Virus record (IMG/VR): IMGVR_UViG_3300035661_000001 | Location: 1 to 64,000 of that record | Strand: one strand, 5' to 3' | Length of the DNA: 64,000 nucleotides | Shown: one piece after another, positions 169 through 31,773 of the stretch | Numbering within the stretch: position 1 is the first letter of the stretch | How the letters are laid out: each line of letters starts with the position of its first letter | Translations under genes and position numbers: made by a program | Notes under the pieces: model-generated | Seen by the model: the letters and a program-made list of their open reading frames with translations, nothing else | Database searches by the model: none | What the model was told of the DNA's origin: nothing

Positions 169-245
169 GCCCCGGTAGCTCAGCTGGATAGAGCGGCGGA
201 CTTCTAAGCCGAAGGTCGGGAGTTCAAATCTCTCCCGGGGCGCTA
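169..245 (+). tRNA. tRNA-Arg(UCU), copy 2 (in the duplicated unit)
   Basis: Identical to 42-118. Confidence 0.7.
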
Positions 246-14421: not shown

Positions 14422-15534
14422 ATGAGCGCATGGTATTGTCAAGTAGTTTTGATTGAGGCAATTGATAAGCATCCAAATGCCGATTCTTTGTCTATTGCTA
14501 CTGTGCTAGGCGCACATCCAGTCATCATTAAGACTGGTGAATATGAAGTCGGACAGGCTGTTGGGTACATCGGTATTGACACCGTGGTTCCAGCGACTGC
14601 TCAGTTTCATTTCATGAGCCCAGTTGTTCGTGATGCTGATGCCAAGATATTGGGTCATAAGTACGAAGTGGATGAGGTTCCTGAGCGATACCGTATCGTG
14701 AAAGCAAAAAAGATTCGCAGTATTTTTAGCATGGGTCTTCTGGTTCCGGCTCCTGAAGGATTGAGTATCGGCGATTCTATTGTAGATGTTCTCGGTCTGA
14801 CCAAGTGGGAAGAGTCCGAAGAACAGGACGAGATTGCCCATAATAATCCCAAAGTCAGAACCAGAACAGATAAGAAACCTGTTGGTTGGGATATTCCCTT
14901 TTACGATATTAGTTCGGCGAGAAGACACAGTAATCTTTTTCTACCTGATGAGGAGATTGTTCTCCTTGAAAAAGATCATGGATGCAATGCATCATTTTGT
15001 TTTGATGGAGAGAAGCTTTGGAAAAAAAGCCGTAACTTCTTCAAAGCAGATGATGTTACCATCATTGATGGTGAAGGTATGACCCATACGGTATCGAGCA
15101 CTGACCATTGGAGTGAAGCTGCTAGACGATATAATCTGAGAGATAAGCTCGCACCTTTTTCTATGAAGGTTTTCTTTGCAGAATGTGTAGGTCAGGTAAA
15201 AGGTTTCAGGTACGATTCTGAAATTGTGGATGGTCAGCTTCTGACTAAGCTACACTTTTATGATGTATATGATCCGATAGAGCGGCGATATCTTGATTAC
15301 GAAGAGGGTCTTGAAATGATCCTTGCCGCAGGATTGACTCCCAGCAAAGAAATTTATAAGGGACCATGGCTTGGTAATGATAAGATGTTTCCTCTCGGCG
15401 AAGGCAAATCAAGTTGGAATGAAAAGCATGTTCGTGAAGGCTGGGTCATGAAGCCCTTGAAAGAAAGACATGTAGACAAAGTTGGGAGATGGCAATTGAA
15501 GTATGTGTCGGAGGCATATTCTTTGGCTAAGTAA
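14422..15534 (+). CDS. ATP-dependent RNA ligase, DRB0094/Rnl2-like with N-terminal tRNA-binding-like domain
   Basis: IDKHPNADSL N-domain; motif I EKDHGCN, III FFAECVG, IIIa FYDV, IV EGWVMKP, V LKYVSEAY. Confidence 0.9.
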   Translation: MSAWYCQVVLIEAIDKHPNADSLSIATVLGAHPVIIKTGEYEVGQAVGYIGIDTVVPATAQFHFMSPVVRDADAKILGHKYEVDEVPERYRIVKAKKIRSIFSMGLLVPAPEGLSIGDSIVDVLGLTKWEESEEQDEIAHNNPKVRTRTDKKPVGWDIPFYDISSARRHSNLFLPDEEIVLLEKDHGCNASFCFDGEKLWKKSRNFFKADDVTIIDGEGMTHTVSSTDHWSEAARRYNLRDKLAPFSMKVFFAECVGQVKGFRYDSEIVDGQLLTKLHFYDVYDPIERRYLDYEEGLEMILAAGLTPSKEIYKGPWLGNDKMFPLGEGKSSWNEKHVREGWVMKPLKERHVDKVGRWQLKYVSEAYSLAK

Positions 15535-15563
15535 ACGATTAGTGCCGGTTATATTGTTTCTGT

Positions 15564-16127
15564 ATGAATACAATAACCGGCACTATCGAGTTACCACAAA
15601 CCAAAATATGTTATGGCTGCAATTTTTATATCGATCCAAAATGTTTTGGTAAACAGTCATCAGCAAAAGATGGTTTGCAAACGAGATGTAAAGATTGTAA
15701 AAAATTATCTGATGCCAAATACCATTTCTTAAATAGAGATAAGGTATTGGAAACTTCAAAGGCTTATCGAAAAGCCAATAAAGAGAAGATAGCCAAACAT
15801 CAAAAGAAATATGTTGAATCCAATCTTGATAAAATCAAGATCGTAAAACATAATAATTATAAGAGAAATAGAGTAAAACTTCTTAAAAAGAATAAAGAAT
15901 ATCTAGCTTCGCATCCAGAGGTTAGGAAGAGGGCAACTAAGAAGTATTACGATAAAAATAAGCTCTATTACCAAAAAAAGAATCGGGTTGTTGATCCTGT
16001 TCTTTGCACTTTATCTTTTCGTTGGGACACCCCTCTTTGTTGCGGGGAACATTCAGGCGATCATCATATGGACGATCATGTATTTTCTGATTCTTTGTAT
16101 GATCATTGGAGCCTATCTGGCAATTGA
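15564..16127 (+). pseudogene. Truncated homing-endonuclease gene fused out of frame to a membrane-gene remnant
   Basis: CxxC...KDGLQTRCKDCK and Lys-rich linker with no nuclease domain; 15985-16134 in another frame encodes a 2-TM paralog of 16136-16306. Confidence 0.6.
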
Positions 16128-16135
16128 TAATTGAT

Positions 16136-16306
16136 ATGACCAATACAAAAATTGGCGTCATACTGATTGCGGTCTCGATCTATGTAATGGTTTTGATTCC
16201 CATCTTGATGGATCCTAACTCTATCAAAACGGTTGCTCTATGGACTGTGATATACATTCTATTAGGCATCATGGTCTTTGGTGTCTACATGATCATGAAC
16301 GACTGA
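16136..16306 (+). CDS. small 2-TM membrane protein
   Basis: Hydrophobic ORF. Confidence 0.6.
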   Translation: MTNTKIGVILIAVSIYVMVLIPILMDPNSIKTVALWTVIYILLGIMVFGVYMIMND

Positions 16307-16528
16307 TTTGAATTCTATATGAAAATCATCCTTGGAGATAAGTTTGAAGCTCGTAACTGTCCAAGGGCTTGAGCAATACTCACTGTAACCGTGATCAGAT
16401 ATTACGAGCAGACCAAAGGTAAAAAGCACAAAAAACTTATCACTGTTATCGGCGAAGGTTGTGCTTGGCACAATGCCCCTGCCGGTGAATTCAGAAACAG
16501 GAAGTACTGGAGAAAACTTTAAATCACA

Positions 16529-17392
16529 ATGAGTACCGGATATAGTTCACACGACAAGGTTAGCCAGATTCGATATACTCAGCCGCTTCTGTCGGATGAT
16601 GGAGTTATCTTCGATCCGGCTGGGTTGTGGACACCTAAGATTGATGCCAGAAGTCCTGCGTATCATTCTTTGTTCGAGCCTTTCGATTTGGATCAATATC
16701 TGTATCCACGTCCTCCCATCGATATGGGTTTGGTCGAGCATGAAGAATATTCATGTGATGTGAATGTCCTACGTATGCCGATCAAATTTCCTGGTACGAA
16801 CTATCGTATTCCAAAAGAAGTAATTGGGCTTCTCCCTGTTATTCAGAGGGCGGCAGAGTACGAAGCGTTCATCAATCCAAGGCATGCCCAGAGCTTTGCT
16901 CACGTTACTTTTGACACAAGTGAAGTTAAAGCTGGTGAGTTTCATCGTTTCCCTGGCTTTCATGGTGATGGTATTCAAGGAACTAAGCTCACGCCCAAAG
17001 TAGTGGCTGAGCATTCCTATATCATGACTACAAATCCTCCGACGGAGTTCTGTCTTCAGCCCTTCTTTTTGAAGCATCTAGATGAGGCGAAGCACAATTT
17101 TTTTCTGGAGTTCGATCGTCAGGCGAAAGATTGCAACGTATATGGTTCGTTGAGCGGGCATCTGTACCTGATCGATCCGTATATGGTTCACAGAACGCCG
17201 TTGATTACTCATCCGGTTCGGCGAACCTTCATAAGAGTAACCTTCTCTTGTATTGAGTTGCAGCACCCCAAAAATACTTTGAACCCGATGTTCCGAGGTC
17301 AAGAGTATGAGAAGCGCATTGATATTCGTGAACGTCTGACTCGCAATGAGTTTGATGTGCCGCTACATCTGTATGGTCTATCGTTAAAATGA
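16529..17392 (+). CDS. putative 2OG-Fe(II) dioxygenase-like protein
   Basis: GFHGDG (HxD), distal VHRT, RTFIRVT. Confidence 0.6.
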   Translation: MSTGYSSHDKVSQIRYTQPLLSDDGVIFDPAGLWTPKIDARSPAYHSLFEPFDLDQYLYPRPPIDMGLVEHEEYSCDVNVLRMPIKFPGTNYRIPKEVIGLLPVIQRAAEYEAFINPRHAQSFAHVTFDTSEVKAGEFHRFPGFHGDGIQGTKLTPKVVAEHSYIMTTNPPTEFCLQPFFLKHLDEAKHNFFLEFDRQAKDCNVYGSLSGHLYLIDPYMVHRTPLITHPVRRTFIRVTFSCIELQHPKNTLNPMFRGQEYEKRIDIRERLTRNEFDVPLHLYGLSLK

Positions 17393-17549
17393 CAGAGCAA
17401 GAACTTGACATTGGTATTCGTAATCATCAAGAGCTTGAGGAAAGCTGGGTGCATTATAGTAAATTCACTACCACTCAAGCTAATCATCGTACAGATGATC
17501 CCGAAAAAGTAACTTGTCCTTCCTGCCGACGAGCCCTAAAAGTAAAGTA

Positions 17550-17870
17550 ATGAAAAGAATTTTCATAAAGCTGGAAGGTCCGATCAGACCGCGGTGGTTG
17601 TCTTCCGATCCTTTCTGGACCCAAATACGAAGCACAACCTGGAAGCCCGAAGGCGGGGAATTTGTCCACGGAGATAGTTACTTTCCGCAAACTTTTGCGG
17701 TAGTTCGCCACCGACGCAGCGGTGAACTATACGGTATCACACCTTACGTAGATAACTCTGGGTATTACAAAGGTTACATACTTGGTACGATTTTTCTTGT
17801 GAAAGAGATTGATCCTATCTCTCTTGTATTGGACACAGCTCCAGACCAAGAATATTTCATTCTCCAGTAA
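17550..17870 (+). CDS. hypothetical protein
   Basis: TAATG overlap with a small upstream ORF (17389-17550). Confidence 0.6.
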   Translation: MKRIFIKLEGPIRPRWLSSDPFWTQIRSTTWKPEGGEFVHGDSYFPQTFAVVRHRRSGELYGITPYVDNSGYYKGYILGTIFLVKEIDPISLVLDTAPDQEYFILQ

Positions 17871-17874
17871 ATCT

Positions 17875-18144
17875 ATGGATGCAAGAACTCTCTTTTCAAA
17901 ACTCAAAACCGAAACGGTTGATGTTGATTGTCTTAAAGAAGGAGACATTATTCACCTGGACTATTGTATTGCGATAGTCCAATCGGTTACCCATCATGAG
18001 GAAAGTCAGTGGAGAGAATGTATAGAGCTGGAATGGGAGTCTGATGGAGATTCTTCGTCGATCATTTATCCAGCTAATACTCCAGGCTACAATCGTAAAT
18101 GGGCAAGACAGACAATCATTGCCCGTGAATTTCTACGAGAATAA
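17875..18144 (+). CDS. hypothetical protein
   Basis: ORF; start adjusted. Confidence 0.6.
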   Translation: MDARTLFSKLKTETVDVDCLKEGDIIHLDYCIAIVQSVTHHEESQWRECIELEWESDGDSSSIIYPANTPGYNRKWARQTIIAREFLRE

Positions 18145-18630
18145 ATGATGTGGTTTCAGAATCTTGCAGATCGGGAAGAAGCTGGTTGGTTTCAAGAGTT
18201 CCATAGTAATCCCGACAAGTTCGGCGACCTCTGGGCAATGACACCAAGCTATAAACTTCTGCCACCAGAAGGAGAGAATGATATCATTCTTCTCTCTACT
18301 GGAGGGTTTGCTCCCATCCATGATGGTCACATTGACATGATGGAAGCTGCAAAGATTCATATGGAGTCCAAAGGGTTCCGTGTTCGTGGCGGATATGTTT
18401 CTCCTGGTCATGATGGTTACGTCGTGGCACACAAAGGAGTTAAGATCTATGCGCCCGAACGATTGGCTTATGCCAACAACAAACTCAAAAGTCATCCGTG
18501 GATCATGGTTGATCCATGGGAAGCCATCGGTTGTAGTTGCAGTGTTAACTTCACGACGTACAAGAGTTCTATGGTAAGTCTCGAATCATCGTTCGTGGTG
18601 ATATCGAATTCACGGCGTTGGATTGACTGA
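18145..18630 (+). pseudogene. NMN/NaMN adenylyltransferase-like (HxGH) gene, apparently C-terminally truncated
   Basis: LLSTGGFAPIHDGH, GGYVSPGHDGYV, WIMVDPWE; ends soon after VNFTT with no ISST-type motif. Confidence 0.6.
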
Positions 18631-18644
18631 GTAAAAAATAAACA

Positions 18645-19190
18645 ATGTTTGTTTCTAGAACTCTCAAAGAAGATCTTGATACCAAAGGCGTCACTGGCTG
18701 GTTTGTCCACGAGATTTTTTCTCGTGACTATCACAGCGATGGCGAACTGTTGAGCTGGACTTTTCTTCCTTATGTGGCAGGACTTCCAGTTGCAAGAACA
18801 TACCAAGAACGCTGTGGTAACGCTGAGCATTCTCAAGCTCTAGCTGACAGCGCAATGAGACTTTCTCTTCAATGCTTCCAAAAAACCCACGGGTTCAAAA
18901 CTATGGGGAAAGAACTGGAAGAAGTATTGAAGAGAAATTCCAAGTACAGCACTCACAAGTTCTTTGAAGATATTCGACTCAAACATAGTCGAACTATCAT
19001 GGGTGATGTGATTGAGAGATCGTTCTGGTGCAGTCTTCATCGCCATGAAACTTATGGTGCGAAGCCTTTCGGATACAGTCCGATCAAGCAGGCGGCTAGT
19101 GCCGCACATGTATTTTCGGCAGCTTGTCCCATCCTCGGTGACGAAGATGTTTGGACGGAAGCCTTGAATGTTCTGCAATCCTTGAATTGA
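18645..19190 (+). CDS. hypothetical protein
   Basis: 181-aa ORF. Confidence 0.7.
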   Translation: MFVSRTLKEDLDTKGVTGWFVHEIFSRDYHSDGELLSWTFLPYVAGLPVARTYQERCGNAEHSQALADSAMRLSLQCFQKTHGFKTMGKELEEVLKRNSKYSTHKFFEDIRLKHSRTIMGDVIERSFWCSLHRHETYGAKPFGYSPIKQAASAAHVFSAACPILGDEDVWTEALNVLQSLN

Positions 19191-19202
19191 GAAGAGTAGT
19201 TT

Positions 19203-19580
19203 ATGAATTTCAAAAACATGTTGGTCGGTCTCTTCTGTTCTATTGCTGTCGTCGGTTGCGCCGGCGGTGTAGGAGACGGCTGCTGTGGTTGGTCCGGGCG
19301 TGACATCAGCGGTGTTGGTCAGGTGAAGAAAGTTCGTCTTGATACTCCGATCCTTTGCCCGGATTATCATGAGGTTGACATTTCTCTTGGTGTCATGCGC
19401 AATGGTGTAGGCTCGATGTCGACGAATGATATGACGCTGTTCATTCCGGAAAATCTGGTTCCAGAGTTGAAGAAGGCGGCAGAAGCTGGTGCTCTCATTA
19501 ATTTTACTTATGATGAGCGCCGTGCTAGTTGGTGTGTTGGTACCACCGACCGGCTGACTTCATTCAAGTTGGCTCAGTAA
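19203..19580 (+). CDS. putative lipoprotein
   Basis: Signal peptide with VVGC lipobox. Confidence 0.75.
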   Translation: MNFKNMLVGLFCSIAVVGCAGGVGDGCCGWSGRDISGVGQVKKVRLDTPILCPDYHEVDISLGVMRNGVGSMSTNDMTLFIPENLVPELKKAAEAGALINFTYDERRASWCVGTTDRLTSFKLAQ

Positions 19581-19584
19581 AACA

Positions 19585-19899
19585 ATGCCTGAAAATAATT
19601 GGGCACAAGCCATTCGAGATCAAATCAAGAAGGCGGAATACGACACGACGCCTGAGGGTAGGGCAGACATCGCGTTAGATCAGTTGCCACAACAGGTTTA
19701 TCGCGCCAAAAAATCGCGTGAAAAAAGAGTTGTAATCTGTTCCCTTTGGAAATGGAACGGTGAAAAAACGCTTAATGATCTTGTTGGATCTGATAGGATC
19801 ATTGTTCAAAAATTGATGGCTGAAGGATTCAGTCCTTTCATTCATTATAATTATGACGACATGGACGGTGGTAGATACTGCCTTTGTTTGCCGGTGTAG
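19585..19899 (+). CDS. hypothetical protein
   Basis: ORF track. Confidence 0.7.
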   Translation: MPENNWAQAIRDQIKKAEYDTTPEGRADIALDQLPQQVYRAKKSREKRVVICSLWKWNGEKTLNDLVGSDRIIVQKLMAEGFSPFIHYNYDDMDGGRYCLCLPV

Positions 19900-19914
19900 T
19901 GCTTCAAAAGTTTT

Positions 19915-19981
19915 AGGTGGGTTATAGGAACCCTTCTTTCTAATTTACTTAAAATAAAATAGGGTTTCTGCTTCCCCATCT
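19915..19981 (+). ncRNA. Conserved hairpin motif, copy A
   Basis: AGGTGGG-TTAT-AGGAACCCT-TCTTTCTA...AGGGTTTCT-GCTTC-CCCATCT. Confidence 0.75.
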
Positions 19982-19996
19982 TTTAGCGAGGATATA

Positions 19997-20563
19997 ATGG
20001 ATAGTCCGTTCTTTAGCAAGGCTACAATCGTTAACACACTACATCGTCAGGTCAAATGGCTTACCGAAGAAGAATTGTCTTCTCTCGCTGAGCAATATTC
20101 TTATGAAGACAAGGTCTTGCATAGTGGTTGGGGTTTCTGCCACCACATTGTTCATCAGGGCTATCTTCGATCTTTTGTCAACTTTTGCAAGCATAAGTTT
20201 GATTCAAAAGTAAAGAAGCGTCAGACTCCTCCCCAATCAAGAATCAGAGAAGTAATTTCTCGTACCATTGATATGGGAAGTGTTAACATTCCTGATGCAG
20301 AAAAATACGATATTTTTGCCCGATCGATCGATTGGACTATCTATTCAGAGTTCGTGAAGCAAAAGATAGCTCAGAAAAAAGATCTTACGAATGACGAGAA
20401 GCTCACGCTTCTTGTTAAACGTTATCATGAATCTGGGCTTGACGGCAAGATCATGAAATCGTGGAAGTGGCGTTCACAATGGTTGAAATCTATTGACGCC
20501 ATCCATTTAAAAATCGAAGATGAAGAAGACGAGCAGTACGGTTACGGCATGTACGGTGGCTGA
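19997..20563 (+). CDS. hypothetical protein (N-domain shared with 20576-21529)
   Basis: LH.Q..WL.E.E...LA....Y.D....SG..FC..RQ.PP motif. Confidence 0.8.
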   Translation: MDSPFFSKATIVNTLHRQVKWLTEEELSSLAEQYSYEDKVLHSGWGFCHHIVHQGYLRSFVNFCKHKFDSKVKKRQTPPQSRIREVISRTIDMGSVNIPDAEKYDIFARSIDWTIYSEFVKQKIAQKKDLTNDEKLTLLVKRYHESGLDGKIMKSWKWRSQWLKSIDAIHLKIEDEEDEQYGYGMYGG

Positions 20564-20575
20564 GGACAAACAAAA

Positions 20576-21529
20576 ATGACCAACAAATTGACTCCACAGC
20601 AAGATCATTTGGCTAATCAACTGCATGAACAAATGCAATGGCTTCATGAACATGAAATGAGAGATCTAGCCAACATCGTTGGTTATGATGATTGTTTCGC
20701 CTATAGTGGCTTGCTGTTTTGTCGATACGTTGTGCAGAACGATTTGACCAGTACGCTTGTAAAGCAGGCTAGCGTATATACTGATCGAGTTAGTCTTCGA
20801 CAGAATCCACCCATCGATAAGGTGAGAGAGATTCTTCTTGAAGCCTTCCAGTTCAAGGGAGAAGCCGTTGAGACATTCGCAATGGATGTTGATATGAAAG
20901 TCTATGCGGCGATGAATGATGGTATGTCATGTTCGCAGCGAAACAGACGCCGGTTCTTTGAAAAATCTGAAGGCAAAAAACTGGATAAGTTGTTTGAGCT
21001 GATGACACCAGCTCAGATAATGAAAGGTTTGTCTTCCGCTCATTGGCATAAAGCTTTCTTGCAAGCCATCGATTTTGTTTGTGGCAAAGAAGAAATGCCT
21101 CTTCTGTTTGGCGTGAAATCAAATGGAGTGTCTGTGGATCGTGATCTGTTGACTCAACAACGTCATGATGCGCAAGTAACTGCCGCTTCGTTTGCTAGAC
21201 AAAGGCAAGCTGCCATTCATGAAATGGAGCTAGAGGAAATGAAGCGTGACGCTGCTGATCAAAAGAGATTGGCTGAAAAATACGCCGCCGAAGCTGCGGA
21301 AAGAAAACTTGAACAGGTTTCCGAAAAGAAGATTGCTCCTGTTCAACAAGCAGTAGAATCTCCCGCGAAAAGATATAGCAATACAGATCCGTATCAATAT
21401 GATCTGTATTACCAGCAACAGCGCGAGCGACGAGAGAATGGATATGCTAGAGAGCCCGTGAATGAGACCGAGCGTGCTGAAGAGCATGCTTTTACTTGGG
21501 GCAATGGGGCTAGACCTTCCTTCTACTGA
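20576..21529 (+). CDS. hypothetical protein with coiled-coil C-terminus (paralog of 19997-20563)
   Basis: Shared N-domain; A/E/Q/R-rich tail. Confidence 0.8.
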   Translation: MTNKLTPQQDHLANQLHEQMQWLHEHEMRDLANIVGYDDCFAYSGLLFCRYVVQNDLTSTLVKQASVYTDRVSLRQNPPIDKVREILLEAFQFKGEAVETFAMDVDMKVYAAMNDGMSCSQRNRRRFFEKSEGKKLDKLFELMTPAQIMKGLSSAHWHKAFLQAIDFVCGKEEMPLLFGVKSNGVSVDRDLLTQQRHDAQVTAASFARQRQAAIHEMELEEMKRDAADQKRLAEKYAAEAAERKLEQVSEKKIAPVQQAVESPAKRYSNTDPYQYDLYYQQQRERRENGYAREPVNETERAEEHAFTWGNGARPSFY

Positions 21530-21542
21530 GATACAAAAATTT

Positions 21543-21606
21543 TGGTGGGCTATTAGAATCCTTCCTTCTACTCTTTTTAAGCAACAGGGTTCTGGCTTTC
21601 CCATCA
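21543..21606 (+). ncRNA. Conserved hairpin motif, copy B
   Basis: TGGTGGG-CTAT-TAGAATCCT-TCCTTCTA...AGGGTTCTG-GCTTT-CCCATCA. Confidence 0.8.
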
Positions 21607-21618
21607 GTTTCAACTAAC

Positions 21619-21675
21619 ACTGGCTATCAAGGATCTTCCTTCTACTTTGGCGTTTCAGATCCTTGGCTTTCCAGT
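21619..21675 (+). ncRNA. Conserved hairpin motif, copy C
   Basis: ACTGG-CTAT-CAAGGATCT-TCCTTCTA...AGATCCTTG-GCTTT-CCAGT. Confidence 0.8.
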
Positions 21676-21697
21676 TTTTCTACAAAGGCAAAAACAA

Positions 21698-23788
21698 ATG
21701 AACAACGCTGTCAACATTCTTCTTCGTCATAACTACATCGAAATTCCTACTGGTAGTGGCGAATGTTCTGCCCAGGATCTTGCTACGGTACTGAGCAATT
21801 TGTCCTACTATGGACGGGCTCTCAGTGTTGATGCTTATCGGGCAGTGTGCCGATTGTCTCACGAAGAATTGACTCGTTGGTGGATGGTGATTGATAAGCA
21901 GCTCAGCGAGATCACTGGTGATAGTCGCAAAATGGATCGTTTTGTTGTCTATAAGAACTTTCCCAATGAAGTTCTCAGCAAGAGCGAAGCTGACTATTGG
22001 ATCCCCCAGATCCTTATGTATTGGGGTTTCCCTAATGATCTTTTCACTCAGCCCGAGGAGAAGCGCCCTGTCTTCGCAGAGAAGGGCAAGGCAATCGTTT
22101 TGTCCCGTGCTCGGAACGAGAGCCTCAATGATATCTTCGTCGCTTACCTGGCGGTCCCTGCGCGCTGGAAGAGCCATGAGAAAGATGATACTCTCTATCT
22201 GGCGGAGCACCTGCCGTTGCCGGCAGATAAGATTGCGTTCAAAGAGAACCTGATTACGCTTGCTACGCATTTCATTGACAGCAATGTGCCACTGCGAATC
22301 TCTTCGGCTACGGACGTTCTGCGTCTTGCGGTTGGACTGAGCAATGGTGATGTTTCTTTGGTGACGAAAAGCAAGTTCGTTTCTTTCCGTCGTCCCGCCC
22401 GTCGATACTTGTGTACTCTTCTGGAGAATAGTTCCAACCTGAGCGACGATATTGCTCGCCGTCCTGAAATGTTCAAGCGTCTTTTGCACCAGCTTCATCC
22501 TGGTGATTTCATTAAGGCATGCCCTAAGACTTGTGAGGTCATGGATAAGCTTTACTTTAACAAGGTAGAGTCTTATAACTCCAAGATCGAAAAGATGATT
22601 GCCGACAAGAATCCCGAGGTTCTCAAGGTGCTGGCTGGTCGTGCTGGTGAATTCCGCCGCCGTCTGGTTCATATGATTGAAATCTTTGGTGATAAGGCGG
22701 TCAAGGCTTTCAGTGATAAGAAGGTTCTTGCCAAGCTGACCAACGGTCAAGTGGTGGCACTTCGTACCTTCTTGGAGACTGTTAACACGAGATTTCATCG
22801 TGTGTTCCCGCCTGGTGGTAACTGGAACAAGCTTCAGATTGGTGAGGCTAAGTGGGTCGAAGAGACCCATCTCTTGGCACTGATCGAGGTTCTCGGAGAC
22901 GTTCTCAAGGACCGTCTTCCCAAGATCAAGTATCTTGATCCGAAGTCGGCGATGATCAAGTTGCCGAGTAATGGAGACGCAGGCGAGTACACGCGTGGAA
23001 CTTCGTTCCCGATCCCAGAAGGAATGACATTCATCCGTTCGGCAAGCTATTGGAAGATCAGTAGTAAGGGCTACGTCTGGTTTGACAATGGTTGGAACTT
23101 CTTTACTGACGAGTGGAAGAACATGGGTTCTGTCGGTTGGAGAGATCCGTTCTTCGGCGGTGTTGCCAAGAAGGATCGACGCGGGTATCTTACCCGTAGC
23201 AATGAGGATGCTGCGGCAGTCTTCTCTGGTGATCCTACCAATACCAAGGAGATGAAGGGTCGCGCTTGTCAGATGATCGATCTGTATCTGGAGCGATTGA
23301 AGACTGAGGGAGTGCGCTATGCTGTGTGGAACATCCTGGCATACAGCAAGATTCCCTTCTCTGATGCTGAAGATGTGTTCGCTGCCCTTCAGTGGGGCGA
23401 GCATGCAGCAGAAGGAAAGCTGTTCGAGCCGGCGCGATGTCAGGTTGCGTTCCCGCTGACCAGTAAGCAGATGACCAAGTACATCGTGATGATCGATCTT
23501 GAGAAGCGTGAGATGATTTATCTGGATGCTAACTTGGCGGGCGATGTCAGTTCTGCTGGAGCTAATGGCGATCGGTTGGAGAAGACCATGCCTGCGATGG
23601 TTGAGTATCTTCGGTCTCTCCCATCCGTTCATGATCTGTTCATTGAATCAGTTGCTCCGGAAGGTGAGCTGAGCATCATGTATTCCGACAAGGATGTCAA
23701 GCTGGAGGGTGGGAAGGCATTTGTTTTTCGCCCAGAGAATAAAGAAAATCATTATACCAGAGTGGGAATCAATTCTCTACTTACATAA
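21698..23788 (+). CDS. MXAN_6230/SCO0854-like protein with C-terminal TerD-related domain
   Basis: VYKNFPNEV...PQILMYWG, RPEMFKRLLHQLHPG, RAGEFRRRL, then FSGDPTN...ACQMIDLYL...REMIYLD; family recalled, not searched. Confidence 0.65.
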   Translation: MNNAVNILLRHNYIEIPTGSGECSAQDLATVLSNLSYYGRALSVDAYRAVCRLSHEELTRWWMVIDKQLSEITGDSRKMDRFVVYKNFPNEVLSKSEADYWIPQILMYWGFPNDLFTQPEEKRPVFAEKGKAIVLSRARNESLNDIFVAYLAVPARWKSHEKDDTLYLAEHLPLPADKIAFKENLITLATHFIDSNVPLRISSATDVLRLAVGLSNGDVSLVTKSKFVSFRRPARRYLCTLLENSSNLSDDIARRPEMFKRLLHQLHPGDFIKACPKTCEVMDKLYFNKVESYNSKIEKMIADKNPEVLKVLAGRAGEFRRRLVHMIEIFGDKAVKAFSDKKVLAKLTNGQVVALRTFLETVNTRFHRVFPPGGNWNKLQIGEAKWVEETHLLALIEVLGDVLKDRLPKIKYLDPKSAMIKLPSNGDAGEYTRGTSFPIPEGMTFIRSASYWKISSKGYVWFDNGWNFFTDEWKNMGSVGWRDPFFGGVAKKDRRGYLTRSNEDAAAVFSGDPTNTKEMKGRACQMIDLYLERLKTEGVRYAVWNILAYSKIPFSDAEDVFAALQWGEHAAEGKLFEPARCQVAFPLTSKQMTKYIVMIDLEKREMIYLDANLAGDVSSAGANGDRLEKTMPAMVEYLRSLPSVHDLFIESVAPEGELSIMYSDKDVKLEGGKAFVFRPENKENHYTRVGINSLLT

Positions 23789-24328
23789 TGAATGTTTGTA
23801 AACTCTTTCTAGCCAATCAAAAAATTGTTGTTTAGACATATTATGTTTGGCTACGTTGCATGTAAAACAACACGTAACGCAATTCGCCAACGTATGTGAT
23901 AATGAGTTATCAACTCTATCTAAACCATTATAAGTGAACTGATATTGATCATATCGTGGTCTATTTTTGGGACATTTATTAACTGTGTGAGCCGGAGCAC
24001 TACCACAATAGTGGCAATTCATCTGGCTCATTTCAAGAAATTTTTCAAAAGTAATATCTGCTTCACCATAATTATGGTGATAGTAGATGGCATTTGCTGA
24101 AACTATTCTTGGAACTACAAATCTTTTGGTCAAATCAAAATGTTGACCACAATTTTTAATTTCCCCATTACGTAGTAGGGCTCCAAATACAGTATGATAA
24201 TTACCGCAAGAACAAAGGCATTTCCAATATATCTTTTTTCTTTTTGTGTTGCTAAATACTGTATCTGACTTTTCTATTACTGTAAGTAATCCAAATGTTT
24301 TTCCGGTTAAATCTATGAGTTTTGACAT
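23777..24328 (-). mobile_element. HNH homing endonuclease inserted in the 3' end of the TerD-like gene
   Basis: DLTGKTFGLLTVI..WKCLCSCG N-domain; CHYCG...GLDRVDNS...NCVTCCFTCNVAK; AT-rich. Confidence 0.85.
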
Positions 24329-24379
24329 ATCTGTTGTTCTCGTATTGTAATCGTTTACAAAGATAACAGATTATTTATA

Positions 24380-24433
24380 GAAAACAAAGACAACGTCTAC
24401 GATCGAGTTCCGCTCAACAAGTTGTTGGGCTGA
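24380..24433 (+). pseudogene. Displaced ancestral 3' end of the TerD-like gene
   Basis: Encodes ENKDNVYDRVPLNKLLG*, versus the current C-terminus ENKENHYTRVGINSLLT*. Confidence 0.75.
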
Positions 24434-24444
24434 GGTATTCCAAC

Positions 24445-24900
24445 ATGAATATGTATCTCGCGGCTTTGCATCTTACCAAACGTGAAGTATTTGAAAATGC
24501 TATGCGGCGGTTTCAATTCAGACGAGAAGAGAGTCTTCTTGTAATTCATGATGGTAAGATGTGGTTGTTTGAACGTAAAGACAACTCAGTTTCTATCAGA
24601 CCCATCCATGGTTTCGTGGTGGGACTGGTACAGGAGGATTGGAATCCTGATGGCAAAGCCGGCAAATATACCAGACATACCAGATATGTTGCTCAAATAT
24701 CTTGGAAGTCCGGCGGCGAACCAACCGGCAAGTGGTTCTCCCATGAAGTTGATTCAACTATTTCTACAGCCTATGTATTTTGGGAGATGAAGAATCTCAA
24801 TACATTCCTTGATAATTTTGAAGATGATTTCTTCAAATTGAAACAAGGTAAGGAGATATTCCTAGTTCCTGTCACAGTAGAGCTGGGTAAAATATCGTAA
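24445..24900 (+). CDS. hypothetical protein
   Basis: GAGG SD. Confidence 0.7.
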   Translation: MNMYLAALHLTKREVFENAMRRFQFRREESLLVIHDGKMWLFERKDNSVSIRPIHGFVVGLVQEDWNPDGKAGKYTRHTRYVAQISWKSGGEPTGKWFSHEVDSTISTAYVFWEMKNLNTFLDNFEDDFFKLKQGKEIFLVPVTVELGKIS

Positions 24901-24906
24901 AGTTTC

Positions 24907-24992
24907 GGCGGGCTATGAGGGTTCTTCCTTCTAAATTAAAAAGCCTCGGGCTAATAACCCGAATAAAAATCTAGAGCCCTCGCTTCCCCGCT
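24907..24992 (+). ncRNA. Conserved hairpin motif, copy D (extra TCGGG/CCCGA hairpin in the loop)
   Basis: GGCGGG-CTAT-GAGGGTTCT-TCCTTCTA...AGAGCCCTC-GCTTC-CCCGCT. Confidence 0.8.
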
Positions 24993-25012
24993 ATTTTTGT
25001 TTGGAGTATACG

Positions 25013-25243
25013 ATGAGAGAAAGTGGATACTATTGGGTAACATGTTCTATTCTTGGATGTATCCATAATGATCATGATAAACCGCAAGTTGCTTACTACA
25101 ATAGTGAAGACACGGATCAGCCATGGATGTTAATCTATGACGAAAACACTTACAATGAGAGAGACTTCCGTGTGATCGAGAAGGTCTCTTCGCCTCCAAT
25201 TGAAGGTCGCCAGCGTGTAACGCTTGCTTCGCCAATTGGTTGA
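25013..25243 (+). CDS. small conserved phage-type protein
   Basis: GGAG SD; MRESGYYWV...W...W pattern. Confidence 0.7.
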   Translation: MRESGYYWVTCSILGCIHNDHDKPQVAYYNSEDTDQPWMLIYDENTYNERDFRVIEKVSSPPIEGRQRVTLASPIG

Positions 25244-25256
25244 AGGATAAAATTTC

Positions 25257-25319
25257 GGTGGGCTATAAAGATCCTTCCTTCTATTTTGGTTTAAATTTCA
25301 GGGTCTTTGCTTTCCCATC
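25257..25319 (+). ncRNA. Conserved hairpin motif, copy E
   Basis: GGTGGG-CTAT-AAAGATCCT-TCCTTCTA...AGGGTCTTT-GCTTT-CCCATC. Confidence 0.8.
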
Positions 25320-25355
25320 AACACTTAAGCGCTCTTCAAGAAGGAAACGCGATAC

Positions 25356-25688
25356 ATGAGCGGAAACTATCAACGCTGGAGTGCAACGATACGTAACTGG
25401 TTTGAGTTCGTGCTCTCTTTCTGGGAAGACGGAACGGATCTCGATCCGCATGATCATGGCGGATCGTCGGGATATGTTTTTCTTTGGTGGGGTGAACTTC
25501 ATGAAAGATCGTTCGTAGAAGAGAATGGAAAGCTAGTTCAGAAGGATCAACTGGTAATGCGGGGTCCTGCTTTCAATCGAATCACCGCTTCTGATATCCA
25601 TGACGTTAAGGCATGTGGGTTTGCAATGGCGACCCATCTGTACTATCCTCCAATCAAGAACGGTAAGAAATTCAAAAGACCGGAGTAG
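25356..25688 (+). CDS. cysteine dioxygenase-like cupin
   Basis: PHDHGGS..V..GELHE...IHDV...THLYYPP matches the CDO HxH...H...HxYxPP pattern. Confidence 0.75.
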   Translation: MSGNYQRWSATIRNWFEFVLSFWEDGTDLDPHDHGGSSGYVFLWWGELHERSFVEENGKLVQKDQLVMRGPAFNRITASDIHDVKACGFAMATHLYYPPIKNGKKFKRPE

Positions 25689-25741
25689 ATTTTACGTATG
25701 GCAAAGAAGAATTCTTCGAGGCAAGAGACGCAAATCTTGGC

Positions 25742-26071
25742 ATGCGTCGGGTTTCAAGAGCAATGGTCACGGGACTTTCTCTTGATCTTTTAGAAATGGA
25801 TCAACGCATTCAAGTATACTCATTGTATGGGGATCTTGAAGAAGATGTTGGATATATTCCACGTAAGACCGGACTATTTTTTCCTGTAGGCATTCCTTCT
25901 GCAGAGCATGAGATTGCTCATATGGTAGAGATGCGCAACAAGGAAAGATGGACCATGACAGATTTTGGTTTCTCTAAATCAAATGATGAATGGAAATCTA
26001 CAAAAAATTTGTTCGCTGAATTTATATCACCTGAAATAGGAATACAAAATGAAAATTTTGATTTTAGATGA
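25742..26071 (+). CDS. hypothetical protein (start uncertain, possibly truncated)
   Basis: HEIAHMVE (HExxH); overlaps the next gene. Confidence 0.45.
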   Translation: MRRVSRAMVTGLSLDLLEMDQRIQVYSLYGDLEEDVGYIPRKTGLFFPVGIPSAEHEIAHMVEMRNKERWTMTDFGFSKSNDEWKSTKNLFAEFISPEIGIQNENFDFR

Positions 26072-26492
26072 TACTGTCCGACGGCTGAACGTCTTTCGTT
26101 TCTTGTATGAAGAGCAGGGTCATGAAGTTGTAACCGTGATGAAGTATCATGATTGCTTGGATCAATTGGAGTCCTATTTTCATTGGGATCTTTTGCATCT
26201 AGATCATGATCTCGGAGACTTCGTCGTTGATGCCGACTTCTATCTAGATGGCAATAACAAACGCCAATTTTACACTGGCGGTCATATAGTACAAGAGTTG
26301 CTTCGTAAAGTTTGGCTTGGGCATCCTGTCCCCAAACGAGTAATCGTTCACTCTATCAATCCACAAGGTAGGGCGATGAGCGATGATCTGAATAGATATG
26401 GTATTCCTACAACATGGGAGCCGTATGTTGATCCTGGTATTCGGATCCCATCACGAGATGATGGTGGGCTAGAAGAGGATGAAAATGTCTGA
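26049..26492 (+). CDS. cyclic-phosphate-processing receiver-like domain protein
   Basis: KILILDD...LHLDHDLG...TG..IV...IVHSINP.G signature. Confidence 0.75.
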   Translation: MKILILDDTVRRLNVFRFLYEEQGHEVVTVMKYHDCLDQLESYFHWDLLHLDHDLGDFVVDADFYLDGNNKRQFYTGGHIVQELLRKVWLGHPVPKRVIVHSINPQGRAMSDDLNRYGIPTTWEPYVDPGIRIPSRDDGGLEEDENV

Positions 26493-26832
26493 ACGTAAAA
26501 CCGCGCTGCTCTTTTTCCAAAAAGATATCGAAGAAGCTTTCCAGTTTTGGTGTGATAATAGTCAGAAGACTATCGGTCCTTTTCTGTTCCAGACTAGGAT
26601 GCAGTTTGGTTTGGAACTGATCTATTTTCTAGTTCCTACCGTTCCATATCATGGAAACACCAAGCTAGTATGGTCAAAAGCTGTCACAATATCGAAAGAA
26701 GAGCTATCTGAGGCTATGGATCTTTTGATTTGTAGTAGGAATTTGCGTAGCGAGTTTGGCTATTGGTTGAGAATTTCCGCCAACGTCAACGGCGTCGAGA
26801 TTGCTGCGATCCCTCACGATAAAAAGATTTAG
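26479..26832 (+). CDS. hypothetical protein
   Basis: GAGG SD; overlap. Confidence 0.65.
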   Translation: MKMSERKTALLFFQKDIEEAFQFWCDNSQKTIGPFLFQTRMQFGLELIYFLVPTVPYHGNTKLVWSKAVTISKEELSEAMDLLICSRNLRSEFGYWLRISANVNGVEIAAIPHDKKI

Positions 26833-27096
26833 GAATCCTAGAGATTCTAAAAAGAAGTTTGCTGAGTTTCTGTTGGGTAACCCCCGTTTGTCGTTTTCAA
26901 ACGACACATAAAACCAGCGCTCCCATCATCGGGGAGTAAAGGACATGGGCGCCAGGCGAAAGGCTAGCGGCAAATATCGGATAGGAGAATGAAGATTCAA
27001 GGCGTGGCGCTTTCAACCCAGCGTCAGACCAGCGATGATATCATTTTCCAGTGACCTCGATTAAGCGCTGTTAGATCACGAGTACCCACTGCCCAG

Positions 27097-27175
27097 GTGT
27101 TGTGGTGGCTAGGTGCCACGCAGCTTTCCTGTCTCGAAAGCTGAAGACCGGTTCAAATCCGTGGCAACACGCCCA
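27097..27175 (+). ncRNA. Non-canonical tRNA-like RNA, GUC (Asp) loop on an 8-bp anticodon stem
   Basis: GTGTTGT/GCAACAC acceptor; TGGC/GCCA D stem; CAGCTTTC-CTGTCTC-GAAAGCTG; GG-TTCAAAT-CC. Confidence 0.55.
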
Positions 27176-27281
27176 GTTTTAAGTCAACAACTTGACATAT
27201 AATGTCAAGAAATTGTTGTGCATTGTTTGGTGTAAATCTTTTCATTACAGAAGAACAGCTCATGAAAATCGCGAGATTCAA

Positions 27282-27884
27282 ATGAAAAAAATGCCTTGCT
27301 TATTGGCCCGTATTTTTCACGGACCCAATTCTTTCACTCTAACAGATCAGGTCACGCCTGGGTGTGAGTGGGTACTTGATGGTATTGGTATTGCTTCCCG
27401 TAAATGGGATGGCACTGCCTGTGCCATTATTGATGGCATGCTTTACAAACGCTTCGATGCCAAACGAAAACCGGACGGTACCTACAAAGATATTCCAGTA
27501 AGGGCAATCCCTTGCGGTGATGCTGATCCTATTACGGGTCACCATCCTCATTGGGTAGCATTGTCATACAGTGCAAACCAGGATAAGCATCACGTCTCAG
27601 CTTGGATTAACTTCCTGAAAGAAAACAAATACAAAACGCCTACTGATGGAACCTACGAATTGATCGGACCTCCCATCGGAAATAATCCGGAAGGTGTTGA
27701 TCGTATGATGTTCAAACGTCATGGTGATATGGTTCTTGAAGTTCCCAGAACCATTAACGGCATCACCGAGTATCTTGCAACTCATCTCTTGGAAGGTATT
27801 GTGTTCACCAATTTTGATGGTAGGTGTTGCAAGATCCGTCGAAAAGATTTCGGATTTACATGGAATGGTTATGTCAAATCGTGA
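27282..27884 (+). CDS. DUF5565/RLIG1-like ATP-dependent RNA ligase
   Basis: Motif I RKWDGT; LYKRFD; GHHPHWV; DGTYELIGP; EGIVF; KIRRKDFG. Confidence 0.75.
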   Translation: MKKMPCLLARIFHGPNSFTLTDQVTPGCEWVLDGIGIASRKWDGTACAIIDGMLYKRFDAKRKPDGTYKDIPVRAIPCGDADPITGHHPHWVALSYSANQDKHHVSAWINFLKENKYKTPTDGTYELIGPPIGNNPEGVDRMMFKRHGDMVLEVPRTINGITEYLATHLLEGIVFTNFDGRCCKIRRKDFGFTWNGYVKS

Positions 27885-30092: not shown

Positions 30093-30095
30093 TGA

Positions 30096-30143
30096 TTGAA
30101 TGATCTCCGAGGTAGAAATGGTATTACCTCGGAGATCATTCAA
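30096..30143. repeat. 19-bp perfect inverted repeat after ligase 1
   Basis: TTGAATGATCTCCGAGGTA / TACCTCGGAGATCATTCAA with a 10-nt loop. Confidence 0.9.
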
Positions 30144-30299
30144 GTAGGTTGAACGGTGCGAACCCATCTCCGAATATTGAGTGGGAAGTACACCAAACGA
30201 GATGATTAGCAACCTAACGTGGTGAAGGGTTGCAAGTTCCCATCCAGCATAATCTGGATGATTGTTTGCTACAAAGACTTCAACAAAGAGAAAGAACAC

Positions 30300-31718: not shown

Positions 31719-31728
31719 GAGTCTGAGA

Positions 31729-31773
31729 CTAATGATGTCTAACCAATCGAACATATGGGTTAGACATCATTAG
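31729..31773. repeat. 16-bp perfect inverted repeat after ligase 2
   Basis: CTAATGATGTCTAACC / GGTTAGACATCATTAG. Confidence 0.9.

What the first reader, a model, noticed from the sequence alone, without database searches (positions are those of the whole stretch)
14422..27884. RNA-repair constellation: two unrelated RNA ligases, a cyclic-phosphate receiver-like protein and a TerD-like protein
Seen: DRB0094/Rnl2-like ligase (14422), DUF5565/RLIG1-like ligase (27282, RKWDGT...EGIVF...KIRRKD), receiver-like LDHDLG protein (26049) and MXAN_6230/TerD-like gene, interleaved with five conserved RNA hairpins and a tRNA-like RNA. Established: 5'-P/3'-OH ligases need 2',3'-cyclic-phosphate healing, and phages repair tRNAs cut by host anticodon nucleases (T4 Pnk/Rnl1 versus PrrC). 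No Pnkp, RtcB or Ro60/TROVE gene is visible here. Inference: a healing-and-sealing anti-defence module in which the receiver-like protein replaces Pnkp.
Basis: partly seen in the sequence, partly recalled or inferred. Interest (0 to 1): 0.72.

Follow-up and report, generated by a model that had tools for sequence, protein, structure and literature searches.

The report
Megaphage RNA-ligase cluster, not one module
A 452-kb phage carries two extra RNA-joining enzymes beside a tRNA-shaped RNA, but the proposed repair module is really several independent gene sets, and the phage has a standard T4-type healing enzyme elsewhere; the hairpins belong to a widespread RNA element, absent from Rfam, that travels with the TerD-like gene.

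Summary

The genome encodes a canonical T4-type Pnkp (kinase plus HAD phosphatase) and a T4 Rnl1-type ligase about 170 kb away. Pnkp is conserved in the two related ~440-kb phages, so cRec does not replace Pnkp.

Co-occurrence also fails. Of 50 viral contigs with the RLIG1-type ligase, 4 have cRec, 2 have Pnkp and 4 have another RNA ligase.

What three related megaphages share is the Rnl5 ligase and a ~290-nt noncoding RNA, ending in a tRNA-like cloverleaf, upstream of the RLIG1 ligase.

The hairpins and the TerD-like gene form a separate module. The RNA motif (86 covariance-model hits in 52 viral loci, 16 of 18 pairs covarying, no Rfam match) sits beside and co-oriented with TerD-like genes and tRNA arrays. 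The two relatives that lack the gene also lack the motif.

The repair genes are a new member of a known kind. The RNA motif and the ncRNA are the new items.

The parts
14422..15534 (+). Rnl5-type (DraRnl/NgrRnl-like) ATP-dependent RNA ligase: N-terminal OB fold plus C-terminal nucleotidyltransferase; motif I EKDHG
   Evidence: Pfam PF21189 and PF09414; phrog_968; NgrRnl PDB hits to the N-terminal domain at E 0.002; homologs in G001 and G002 at 49% and 43% identity
18145..18630 (+). Cytidylyltransferase-like (NMN adenylyltransferase-like) protein; context gene. The G001 homolog is fused to a PRTase domain
   Evidence: TIGR00482 E 1.5e-5, below cut-off; L008 homolog has CTP_transf_like plus Pribosyltran
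19906..19985 (+). RNA motif copy 1 (outer helix P1, CUAU/GCUUU internal loop, inner helix P2, invariant CUUCCUUCUA)
   Evidence: 85.6 bits
21534..21610 (+). RNA motif copy 2, first of a tandem pair upstream of the TerD-like gene
   Evidence: 85.1 bits
21608..21681 (+). RNA motif copy 3, ends 17 nt before the ATG of the TerD-like gene
   Evidence: 73.2 bits; sequence
21698..23788 (+). TerD-like protein (phrog_33734): helical-repeat N-terminal part plus C-terminal TerD beta-sandwich; no RING domain
23777..24328 (-). HNH / endonuclease VII-type homing endonuclease; not part of the repair set
   Evidence: phrog_374 and phrog_1035, E 2e-13
24897..24997 (+). RNA motif copy 4 (extra hairpin inserted in the apical loop)
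   Evidence: 75.6 bits
25247..25324 (+). RNA motif copy 5, upstream of the cupin gene 25356-25688
   Evidence: 87.6 bits; cupin CDO_I E 7e-7
26049..26492 (+). cRec (cyclic-phosphate-processing receiver) domain protein; acidic residues ILDD and LDHD
   Evidence: PF20274, 39.3 bits; phrog_1479; sequence; 72% identical homolog in G001
26479..26832 (+). 117-aa ORF overlapping the cRec stop codon; co-conserved with cRec in G001; function unknown
   Evidence: no family and no fold
26891..27184 (+). Conserved ~290-nt noncoding RNA: multi-helix 5' domain plus 3' tRNA-like domain; found only in G000, G001 and G002, always upstream of the RLIG1-type gene
   Evidence: alignment and RNAalifold, 24 of 66 pairs compensatory; nhmmer E 1e-68 to 2e-71, one copy per genome; no Rfam hit
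27097..27175 (+). tRNA-like cloverleaf: 7-bp acceptor, D arm, anticodon arm with loop CUGUCUC (GUC, U37), GGUUCAAAUCC T loop
   Evidence: relaxed ARAGORN; MFE cloverleaf, z -2.3; compensatory changes in acceptor and anticodon stems read
27282..27884 (+). RLIG1 (C12orf29/DUF5565)-type 5'-P/3'-OH RNA ligase; invariant K41-x-D-G, E126, E171-G, K184
28542..30092 (+). phiEco32-like COOH-NH2 ligase (context; tandem paralogs follow)
   Evidence: PF14395 E 8e-15; paralog repeats; syntenic in G001 and G002

Best explanation
The stretch is a mosaic accessory region of a ~452-kb megaphage, not one operon.

(1) Sealing unit. An Rnl5-type ligase, and an RLIG1-type ligase preceded by a ~290-nt structured RNA ending in a tRNA-like cloverleaf, are shared with two related ~440-kb phages. 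Both enzymes are ATP-dependent ligases that join 5'-phosphate to 3'-hydroxyl ends. They most likely add sealing capacity for broken tRNA or other RNA to a canonical T4-type Pnkp-Rnl1 healing-and-sealing pair encoded ~170 kb away. Pnkp acting in trans would supply the kinase and the 2',3'-cyclic/3'-phosphatase activities.

(2) cRec unit. The cRec protein and its overlapping 117-aa partner ORF are an optional accessory, present in two of the three relatives. As predicted by Iyer et al. 2021, cRec may open 2',3'-cyclic phosphates or cyclic ADP-ribose derivatives. It supplements Pnkp rather than replacing it.

(3) TerD unit. The TerD-like protein and the five hairpins are an independent inserted module. 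The hairpin is an 80-nt RNA element that travels with TerD-like genes and tRNA arrays in many phages. It most likely acts as a cis-regulatory or processing element, or as the protein's RNA partner.

Shown here: gene identities, RNA structures, and distributions. Inferred: every activity and the anti-defence role.
For: - Ligase identities.
- cRec.
- Canonical Pnkp at 188343-189287 (AAA_33 plus HAD_PNKP E 4e-40), Rnl1-type ligase (phrog_562 E 1e-42) at 192428-193642, and a split PF09414 ligase near 196 kb. Pnkp homologs in G001 and G002.
- Synteny: G002 has cupin, Rnl5, a small ORF, the ncRNA, RLIG and COOH-NH2 ligase. G001 has Rnl5 ... cRec, partner ORF, ncRNA, ~1 kb, RLIG.
- ncRNA conserved with compensatory pairs.
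- RLIG1 enzymes ligate tRNA halves in the anticodon loop, and viral RLIG1 is predicted to be anti-defence (PMC11494293). DUF5565 neighbourhoods are enriched in tRNA genes and RNA ligases (PMC10364804). cRec-ligase linkage in jumbo phages is described in PMC7824862.
- Independence of the TerD unit: the motif is found in 52 viral loci and 39 of them carry a TerD-like gene. All 61 copies in those loci are co-oriented with the gene. Ten of 11 further motif contigs have the gene elsewhere, while G001 and G002 lack both.
Against: - No activity, expression or transcript boundary was measured.
- Distance (170 kb) does not prove that Pnkp serves these ligases.
- Most phages with the RLIG1-type ligase have no Pnkp, cRec or second ligase. 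RLIG1 may therefore act on ends that need no healing, or in a role other than repair.
- Only three genomes carry the ncRNA, so covariation support is thin.
- The genome has very uneven GC (30-58%). An assembly chimera was excluded only indirectly, by the presence of both gene sets in two other ~440-kb contigs.
Confidence: 0.65

Rival explanations
1. One reading: a self-contained healing-and-sealing anti-defence module. cRec opens the 2',3'-cyclic phosphate in place of Pnkp, and the two ligases seal the break.
For: cRec is a predicted cyclic-phosphate phosphoesterase linked to RNA ligases in some jumbo phages (PMC7824862). In G000 and G001, cRec lies 0.8-1.7 kb upstream of RLIG on the same strand.
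Against: - A canonical Pnkp and Rnl1 are present and conserved.
- No 5' kinase lies in the region, and cRec cannot supply one.
- G002 keeps both ligases and the ncRNA but has no cRec.
- cRec occurs in only 4 of 50 RLIG-bearing contigs. In three of those it lies 22-136 kb away, beside a sigma factor, a helicase or a GNAT gene.
Confidence: 0.08
2. The RLIG1-type ligase works on a dedicated phage RNA. The adjacent ~290-nt ncRNA (or its tRNA-Asp-like domain) would be its substrate, guide or decoy. For example, it could be a nuclease-bait tRNA mimic that is cut and resealed, or an RNA matured by ligation. On this reading the ligase does not perform general host-tRNA repair.
For: - The ncRNA is always upstream of RLIG in the three genomes, whatever else differs.
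- The GUC anticodon loop with the unusual U37 is conserved.
- An unrelated RLIG phage (L053) has a real tRNA-Asp(GTC), also with U37, 87 nt downstream of RLIG.
- RLIG1 enzymes act in anticodon loops (PMC11494293).
Against: - Forty-eight other RLIG loci have no such RNA.
- The adjacency could simply reflect co-transcription or shared ancestry among three relatives.
- The 3' CCA is not conserved.
Confidence: 0.15
3. The TerD-like protein plus the hairpin RNAs is a Ro60/Y-RNA-like ribonucleoprotein, with a helical ring that binds a structured RNA encoded in tandem next to the gene. It would cooperate with the ligases in RNA quality control, so the 'missing' Ro60 would in fact be present in disguise.
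For: - Ro60 chains are the best non-TerD PDB matches of the whole model (Z 4.0-5.6, 200-300 residues aligned).
- For the helical domain alone, Ro60 of Thermus phage phiLo ranks first of 48,161 chains (Z 7.7). Deinococcus Rsr scores Z 6.8 and Xenopus Ro scores Z 6.0. These three cover most of the domain, where nearly all the other listed matches align about 130 residues or fewer.
- The tandem, co-oriented RNAs beside the gene and near tRNAs mimic rsr-Y RNA loci.
Against: - The Z values lie within the stated noise range for helical models, the rmsd is 10-14 A, and Foldseek gives E 0.35.
- Pfam TROVE is absent genome-wide.
- AFDB clusters point to TerD families and a ZorC EH-domain cluster, not TROVE.
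- The motif matches no Y RNA family.
- The module is absent from G001 and G002, which keep the ligases.
Confidence: 0.12

Closest known systems
Phage T4 Pnkp + Rnl1 tRNA repair (counter to the PrrC anticodon nuclease)
   Same: The same genome encodes a kinase plus HAD-phosphatase Pnkp and an Rnl1-type ligase. The window's ligases need the same 5'-P/3'-OH ends.
   Different: The T4-type pair lies ~170 kb from the finding. The window's ligases belong to other families (Rnl5, RLIG1), and no healing enzyme of the T4 type lies beside them.
Rnl5 ligases (Deinococcus DraRnl, Naegleria NgrRnl)
   Same: N-terminal OB fold followed by the nucleotidyltransferase domain, with no C-terminal domain. PDB hits are to NgrRnl.
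   Different: Only ~28% identical to annotated phage homologs. Motif I reads KDHG. Activity on nicked duplex RNA has not been tested.
RLIG1 / C12orf29 (human; Yasminevirus RLIG1, PDB 9C6L)
   Same: Profile match at E 2e-20 across the whole domain. The motif I lysine and both catalytic glutamates are conserved.
   Different: Minimal ~190-200-aa phage form with an invariant ITGHHPHW insert. It scores below the Pfam RLIG1 gathering threshold. It is preceded by a dedicated structured RNA in this lineage only.
cRec-containing RNA-repair / NAD-ADPr neighbourhoods of jumbo phages (Iyer et al. 2021, PMC7824862)
   Same: A cRec domain protein lies near RNA ligases in a jumbo phage. An NMNAT-like gene is in the same region.
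   Different: The linkage is loose and is not conserved in the nearest relative. cRec is translationally coupled to an unknown 117-aa ORF.
Bacterial Ro60 (Rsr) with adjacent Y RNAs (YrlA/YrlB)
   Same: The TerD-like gene is flanked by tandem co-oriented structured RNAs of ~80-100 nt, often beside tRNAs. There is a weak whole-domain structural resemblance of its helical part to Ro60.
   Different: There is no TROVE sequence signal, a TerD sandwich where Ro60 has a vWA domain, and no similarity of the RNA to Y RNA families. The structural scores lie in the noise range.

Membership tests
Rnl5 RNA ligase | N-terminal OB-fold domain followed by an RNA-ligase nucleotidyltransferase domain | tested here: met
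   PF21189 residues 10-73 and PF09414 residues 177-362, both above cut-off
Rnl5 RNA ligase | Motif I lysine nucleophile (KxHG/KxDG) | tested here: met
   EKDHG at the start of the PF09414 match, read from the translation
Rnl5 RNA ligase | Seals 3'-OH/5'-P nicks in duplex RNA | not testable with these tools
   Needs an enzyme assay
RLIG1 (C12orf29/DUF5565) | Sequence-profile relationship to a solved, active RLIG1 | tested here: met
   Profile A2 against 9c6l: E 2.3e-20, profile positions 20-185 of 187
RLIG1 (C12orf29/DUF5565) | Pfam PF17720 gathering threshold | tested here: not met
   12.9 bits against 25; the phage form is about 60% of the model length
RLIG1 (C12orf29/DUF5565) | Catalytic Lys (KxDG), ATP-binding Glu and metal-binding Glu | tested here: met
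   K41, D43, G44, E126, E171 and K184 are invariant in 24 homologs and aligned to the 9c6l motifs
cRec domain (PF20274) | Pfam model above cut-off, with the receiver-type acidic residues | tested here: met
   39.3 bits against 27; ILDD and LDHD in the sequence
cRec domain (PF20274) | Conserved operonic linkage to an RNA ligase | tested here: inconclusive
   Near RLIG in G000 and G001. Absent from G002. Lies 22-136 kb from RLIG in three other jumbo phages
T4-type healing-and-sealing module | Polynucleotide 5' kinase and 3'/cyclic phosphatase next to the ligase | tested here: not met
   None in the window. Pnkp is at genome position 188343-189287
TerD domain proteins | TerD beta-sandwich | tested here: met
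   VIA Z 13.8-16.8 to five TerD-type entries (four annotated TerD or TerD homologues) over residues ~437-634. Pfam TerD in 5 of 28 homologs, but not in the window protein itself
MXAN_6230/SCO0854 RING family | NCBIfam cut-off and a C-terminal RING domain | tested here: not met
   159.8 bits against 600, matching only model positions 385-733 of 842. No RING family was found by Pfam
Ro60/TROVE | TROVE sequence family | tested here: not met
   PF05731 has no match in the genome
Ro60/TROVE | HEAT-repeat toroid fold | tested here: inconclusive
   Ro60 is the top-ranked match, but at Z 7.7 with rmsd 10 A; Foldseek E 0.35
tRNA | Detection by tRNA models | tested here: not met
   No ARAGORN call at default settings. 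No Rfam tRNA hit at E<=10. The element is therefore 'tRNA-like' only
Any Rfam family (80-nt motif and 290-nt ncRNA) | Covariance-model match | tested here: not met
   No relevant hits at E<=10 or E<=1 in the window, L009, L127, L101 or L160

The most novel reading that the evidence does not exclude
The 80-nt hairpin is a new, widespread class of phage RNA that is the dedicated partner of the TerD-like protein family. It could be a Y-RNA-like ligand of a Ro60-like helical ring carrying a TerD domain, or a riboswitch- or operator-type leader. It is embedded in tRNA arrays, so phages would carry a previously unrecognised RNP acting on tRNA transcripts. In this megaphage that RNP sits among four families of RNA ligase.
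Probability: 0.2. Interest if true: 0.8.

Novelty: new variant of a known kind. Interest (0 to 1): 0.55.

Why it matters
- It corrects an attractive but wrong inference. cRec is not a Pnkp substitute here, which is relevant to how cRec proteins are annotated.
- One phage is shown to stack four RNA-ligase families (Rnl1, Rnl2-like, Rnl5, RLIG1) on one Pnkp. This makes it a good system for asking why ligases are not redundant.
- A natural candidate RNA partner for a viral RLIG1 is identified.
- A strongly covarying RNA family is defined that is absent from Rfam and tied to TerD-like genes and tRNA arrays. This gives the long-enigmatic TerD domain a testable link to RNA.

Tried and rejected
- Nucleotide search of GenBank phages found nothing.
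- tmRNA, an intron-containing tRNA, and every Rfam family were rejected for the 290-nt RNA.
- Pattern scans for more ncRNA homologs in IMG/VR and in metagenomes returned only G001, G002 and chance tRNA matches.
- blastp clustering of the neighbours of 51 RLIG loci gave no recurrent partner gene.
- cRec neighbourhoods in three other jumbo phages show no ligase.
- The 117-aa cRec partner has no family and no confident fold.
- A sigma-70 promoter reading of the hairpins was rejected, because the variable 7-mer covaries with a distal strand.
- The DUF805b hit on the opposite strand was judged to be chance.
- Pairing of the CUUCCUUCUA loop with downstream Shine-Dalgarno sequences was looked at by eye only and is left open.
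- A chimeric assembly was considered because of the 30-58% GC swings. It was discounted because G001 and G002 hold both gene sets.
- The helical domain of the TerD-like protein gave no Pfam family.

Full report
**Setting.** The window is the first 64 kb of a single 451,956-bp viral contig with direct terminal repeats, rated 100% complete and carrying 41 tRNA genes. No GenBank phage is similar at the nucleotide level. Two IMG/VR contigs of 446.5 kb (G001) and 432.8 kb (G002) are its nearest relatives; their proteins are 43-72% identical to those of the region.

**Observation: proteins.**
- ORF 14422-15534 has a PHA02142 OB fold followed by the RNA_ligase domain, hits phrog_968, and matches the N-terminal domain of Naegleria NgrRnl. 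This is the Rnl5 (DraRnl/DRB0094) architecture, with motif I reading EKDHG.
- ORF 27282-27884 scores only E 0.048 on Pfam RLIG1. It matches phrog_14301 'RNA ligase' end to end at E 5e-53. A profile of 24 phage homologs hits the crystal-structure sequence of Yasminevirus RLIG1 (9c6l) at E 2e-20. K-x-D-G, both catalytic glutamates and motif V lysine are invariant.
- ORF 26049-26492 is a cREC_REC domain protein scoring above the Pfam cut-off.
- ORF 21698-23788 matches the MXAN_6230/SCO0854 model only partially and lacks the RING domain. A model with pLDDT 80.6 shows a C-terminal TerD sandwich (Z up to 16.8), and 5 of 28 homologs pass Pfam TerD.

**Observation: RNAs.** The 'five hairpins' are five copies of one ~80-nt element, with a sixth copy at 117.85 kb. 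The element has two nested helices and invariant GGCUAU, CUUCCUUCUA and UUUCC. Eleven of 18 pairs show compensatory change among the six copies, and sliding the partner columns destroys the signal. The tRNA-like RNA lies at 27097-27175. It is below the default ARAGORN and Rfam thresholds but folds to a cloverleaf by minimum free energy.

**The key inference fails.** Searching the whole genome found no RtcB and no TROVE. It did find a 314-aa protein at 188343-189287 with an AAA_33 kinase and a HAD_PNKP phosphatase domain (E 4e-40), which is a canonical T4-type Pnkp. Four kilobases further on lies a T4 Rnl1-type ligase (phrog_562, E 1e-42), and near 196 kb there is a further, split, PF09414 ligase. 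Both related megaphages have Pnkp homologs at 55-56% identity. This also argues that the low-GC and high-GC parts of the contig belong to one genome. The phage therefore already has the standard kinase/phosphatase healing enzyme. cRec has no kinase function and does not need to replace anything.

**Co-occurrence.**
- In G002 the order is cupin, Rnl5, a 61-aa ORF, the ncRNA, RLIG, then COOH-NH2 ligases. Its genome has no cRec.
- In G001 the order is Rnl5..., cRec, the 117-aa partner ORF, the ncRNA, ~1 kb, then RLIG.
- Among 50 viral contigs with an RLIG homolog (21 of them at least 90% complete), cRec occurs in 4, Pnkp in 2 and another PF09414 ligase in 4. These are jumbo or near-jumbo contigs of 189-447 kb.
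- In three of the four cRec-positive contigs, cRec lies 22-136 kb from RLIG, beside a sigma factor, a helicase or an acetyltransferase.
- Clustering all neighbours of RLIG gave no recurrent partner.

The 'constellation' is therefore lineage-specific juxtaposition. What the three relatives share is Rnl5 plus the ncRNA-RLIG pair.

**The ncRNA.** A ~290-nt noncoding stretch (26891-27184) is conserved in the three megaphages, one copy each (nhmmer E 1e-68 to 2e-71). It always lies upstream of RLIG, by ~100 nt in G000 and G002 and by ~1 kb in G001. RNAalifold predicts several helices, with 24 of 66 pairs keeping the pair through changes on both sides. The 3' domain has these features:
- a 7-bp acceptor stem whose sequence differs in each genome (GUGUUGU/GCAACAC, GGCGUUU/GAACGCU, GCGUGUU/GACACGU);
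- a D arm with GG;
- a 6-bp anticodon stem with compensatory changes;
- a conserved NYGUCUC loop, i.e. a GUC anticodon followed by an unusual U37;
- a GGUUCRAAUCC T loop.

A terminal CCA is not conserved. Nothing in Rfam matches, and scans of IMG/VR and metagenomes found no further members. In a distant RLIG phage (L053) a bona fide tRNA-Asp(GTC), also with U37, lies 87 nt downstream of RLIG. This fits the published enrichment of tRNA genes near DUF5565 genes (PMC10364804) and the anticodon-loop ligation activity of RLIG1 enzymes (PMC11494293). Whether the RNA is a substrate, a decoy, or simply co-transcribed is unknown.

**The hairpins and the TerD-like gene are a separate module.** By my estimate, roughly half could be chance for a collection of this size. 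The covariance model then found 86 matches (72 distinct) in 52 of the 80 loci returned. Of cells in the alignment, 92% are paired, 16 of 18 pairs show double changes, and the covariation score is 0.75 against 0.19 when shuffled and 0.12-0.16 when slid. The alignment is model-fitted, so these numbers lean towards the structure.

tblastn with all region proteins against these loci returned essentially one protein: homologs of the 713-aa TerD-like ORF (21647-23788), in 39 of the 52 loci. All 61 motif copies in those loci are co-oriented with the gene. Forty-six are upstream, often ending within tens of nucleotides of the start, and arrays of two to five copies are common. Ten of 11 further motif-bearing contigs have the gene elsewhere. 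The exception is 27% complete. G001 and G002 lack both the motif and the gene. Twenty-seven of 86 copies lie within 300 nt of a co-oriented tRNA, some only 3-14 nt away. The sixth copy in this genome follows tRNA-Arg. Rfam has no such family, and a full-text search for the sequence strings or for TerD with RNA motifs found nothing. The hairpins are thus not ligase-specific.

**What the TerD-like protein might be.** AFDB clusters with the same architecture are named TerD family proteins. One cluster matching residues 1-441 is named a ZorC EH-domain protein. Among solved structures, Ro60 proteins are the best matches after TerD (Z 4.0-5.6). For the helical domain folded alone, Ro60 of Thermus phage phiLo ranks first of 48,161 chains (Z 7.7), with Deinococcus Rsr and Xenopus Ro also covering most of the domain. 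These values are within the tool's stated noise for helical repeats, the rmsd exceeds 10 A, and Foldseek is non-significant. I treat Ro60-likeness as a lead only. It is attractive because tandem co-oriented RNAs next to the gene and near tRNAs is how bacterial rsr-Y RNA loci look.

**Mechanism, as far as it can be stated.**
- Shown: the phage has four ligase families and one Pnkp. There is a conserved ncRNA-RLIG unit, a cRec-ORF pair with overlapping reading frames, and a TerD-like gene with its RNA element.
- Inferred from family knowledge: nucleases that leave 2',3'-cyclic phosphate and 5'-OH ends are countered by Pnkp (kinase and phosphatase), and the product is sealed by Rnl1, RLIG1 (single-stranded anticodon loops) or Rnl5 (nicks in duplex regions). 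cRec may add a cyclic-phosphodiesterase or ADPr-cyclic-phosphate step (PMC7824862).
- Because most RLIG phages lack any healing enzyme, RLIG1 may mainly reseal 5'-P/3'-OH breaks or rely on host enzymes.

**Novelty.** cRec-ligase neighbourhoods in jumbo phages, viral RLIG1 as a predicted anti-defence ligase, and the DUF5565-tRNA association are all published (PMC7824862, PMC11494293, PMC10364804). On its own terms the finding is another member of a known kind, with its distinctive inference refuted. New here, to the extent the held libraries show, are the ncRNA with a tRNA-like end coupled to RLIG1 and the 80-nt RNA family coupled to TerD-like genes.

Noticed in passing
whole genome G000 (window = 1-64000): GC content is strongly uneven: ~44% for 1-70 kb, ~30-36% for 70-410 kb, 54-58% for 410-440 kb, and ~47% at the end. 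A chimeric assembly was discounted only indirectly: G001 and G002 carry homologs of genes from the 1-70-kb and 70-410-kb parts, and the 410-440-kb part was not checked.
   Followed up: partly
G000:80119-80195: tRNA with anticodon CUA (an amber suppressor, labelled Pyl by ARAGORN) among the 41 tRNAs. This raises the possibility of TAG recoding in part of the genome.
   Followed up: no
G000 ~195.5-196.6 kb (L004:900-1902): Only the C-terminal half of a PF09414 RNA ligase is an intact ORF. A 148-aa ORF on the opposite strand sits where the N-terminal half should be, which suggests a split or intron/endonuclease-interrupted ligase gene.
   Followed up: partly
window 23777-24328 (-): An HNH/endonuclease VII-type gene on the opposite strand overlaps the last 12 nt of the TerD-like gene. 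It is probably a homing endonuclease insertion. A second endonuclease-like ORF (phrog_2340) directly follows the Rnl5 gene at 15564-16127.
   Followed up: no
window 28542-31750; L008:11709-15005; L009:11121-15536: Tandem paralogs of a phiEco32-like COOH-NH2 ligase (repeat spacing ~1605 nt) follow RLIG in all three megaphages, in 2-3 copies.
   Followed up: no
L053:255-974: In a distantly related small phage contig, the RLIG homolog is followed after 87 nt by a canonical tRNA-Asp(GTC). Its anticodon loop CUGUCUA has U at position 37, the same oddity as in the megaphage tRNA-like RNA.
   Followed up: partly
L100, L118, L101, L105, L127/L149: The 80-nt RNA motif directly abuts tRNA genes (3-14 nt) on either side within tRNA arrays, always on the same strand. 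This suggests co-transcription and perhaps a processing role.
   Followed up: partly
window 21698-23020 (residues 1-441 of the TerD-like protein): The predicted structure matches an AFDB cluster named 'Zorya protein ZorC EH domain-containing protein' at E 2e-25 and 27% identity. This is a possible link between this phage family and a defence-system component.
   Followed up: no
L008:3461-4723: The G001 homolog of the window's 161-aa cytidylyltransferase-like protein (18145-18630) is a 420-aa fusion with a phosphoribosyltransferase domain. This hints at nucleotide/NAD-type metabolite synthesis in the same accessory region.
   Followed up: no
window 42-243 and G000:451744-451945: Tandem duplicate tRNA-Arg(TCT) genes sit inside the terminal repeat, so the repeat that defines the genome ends is built of tRNA copies.
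   Followed up: no
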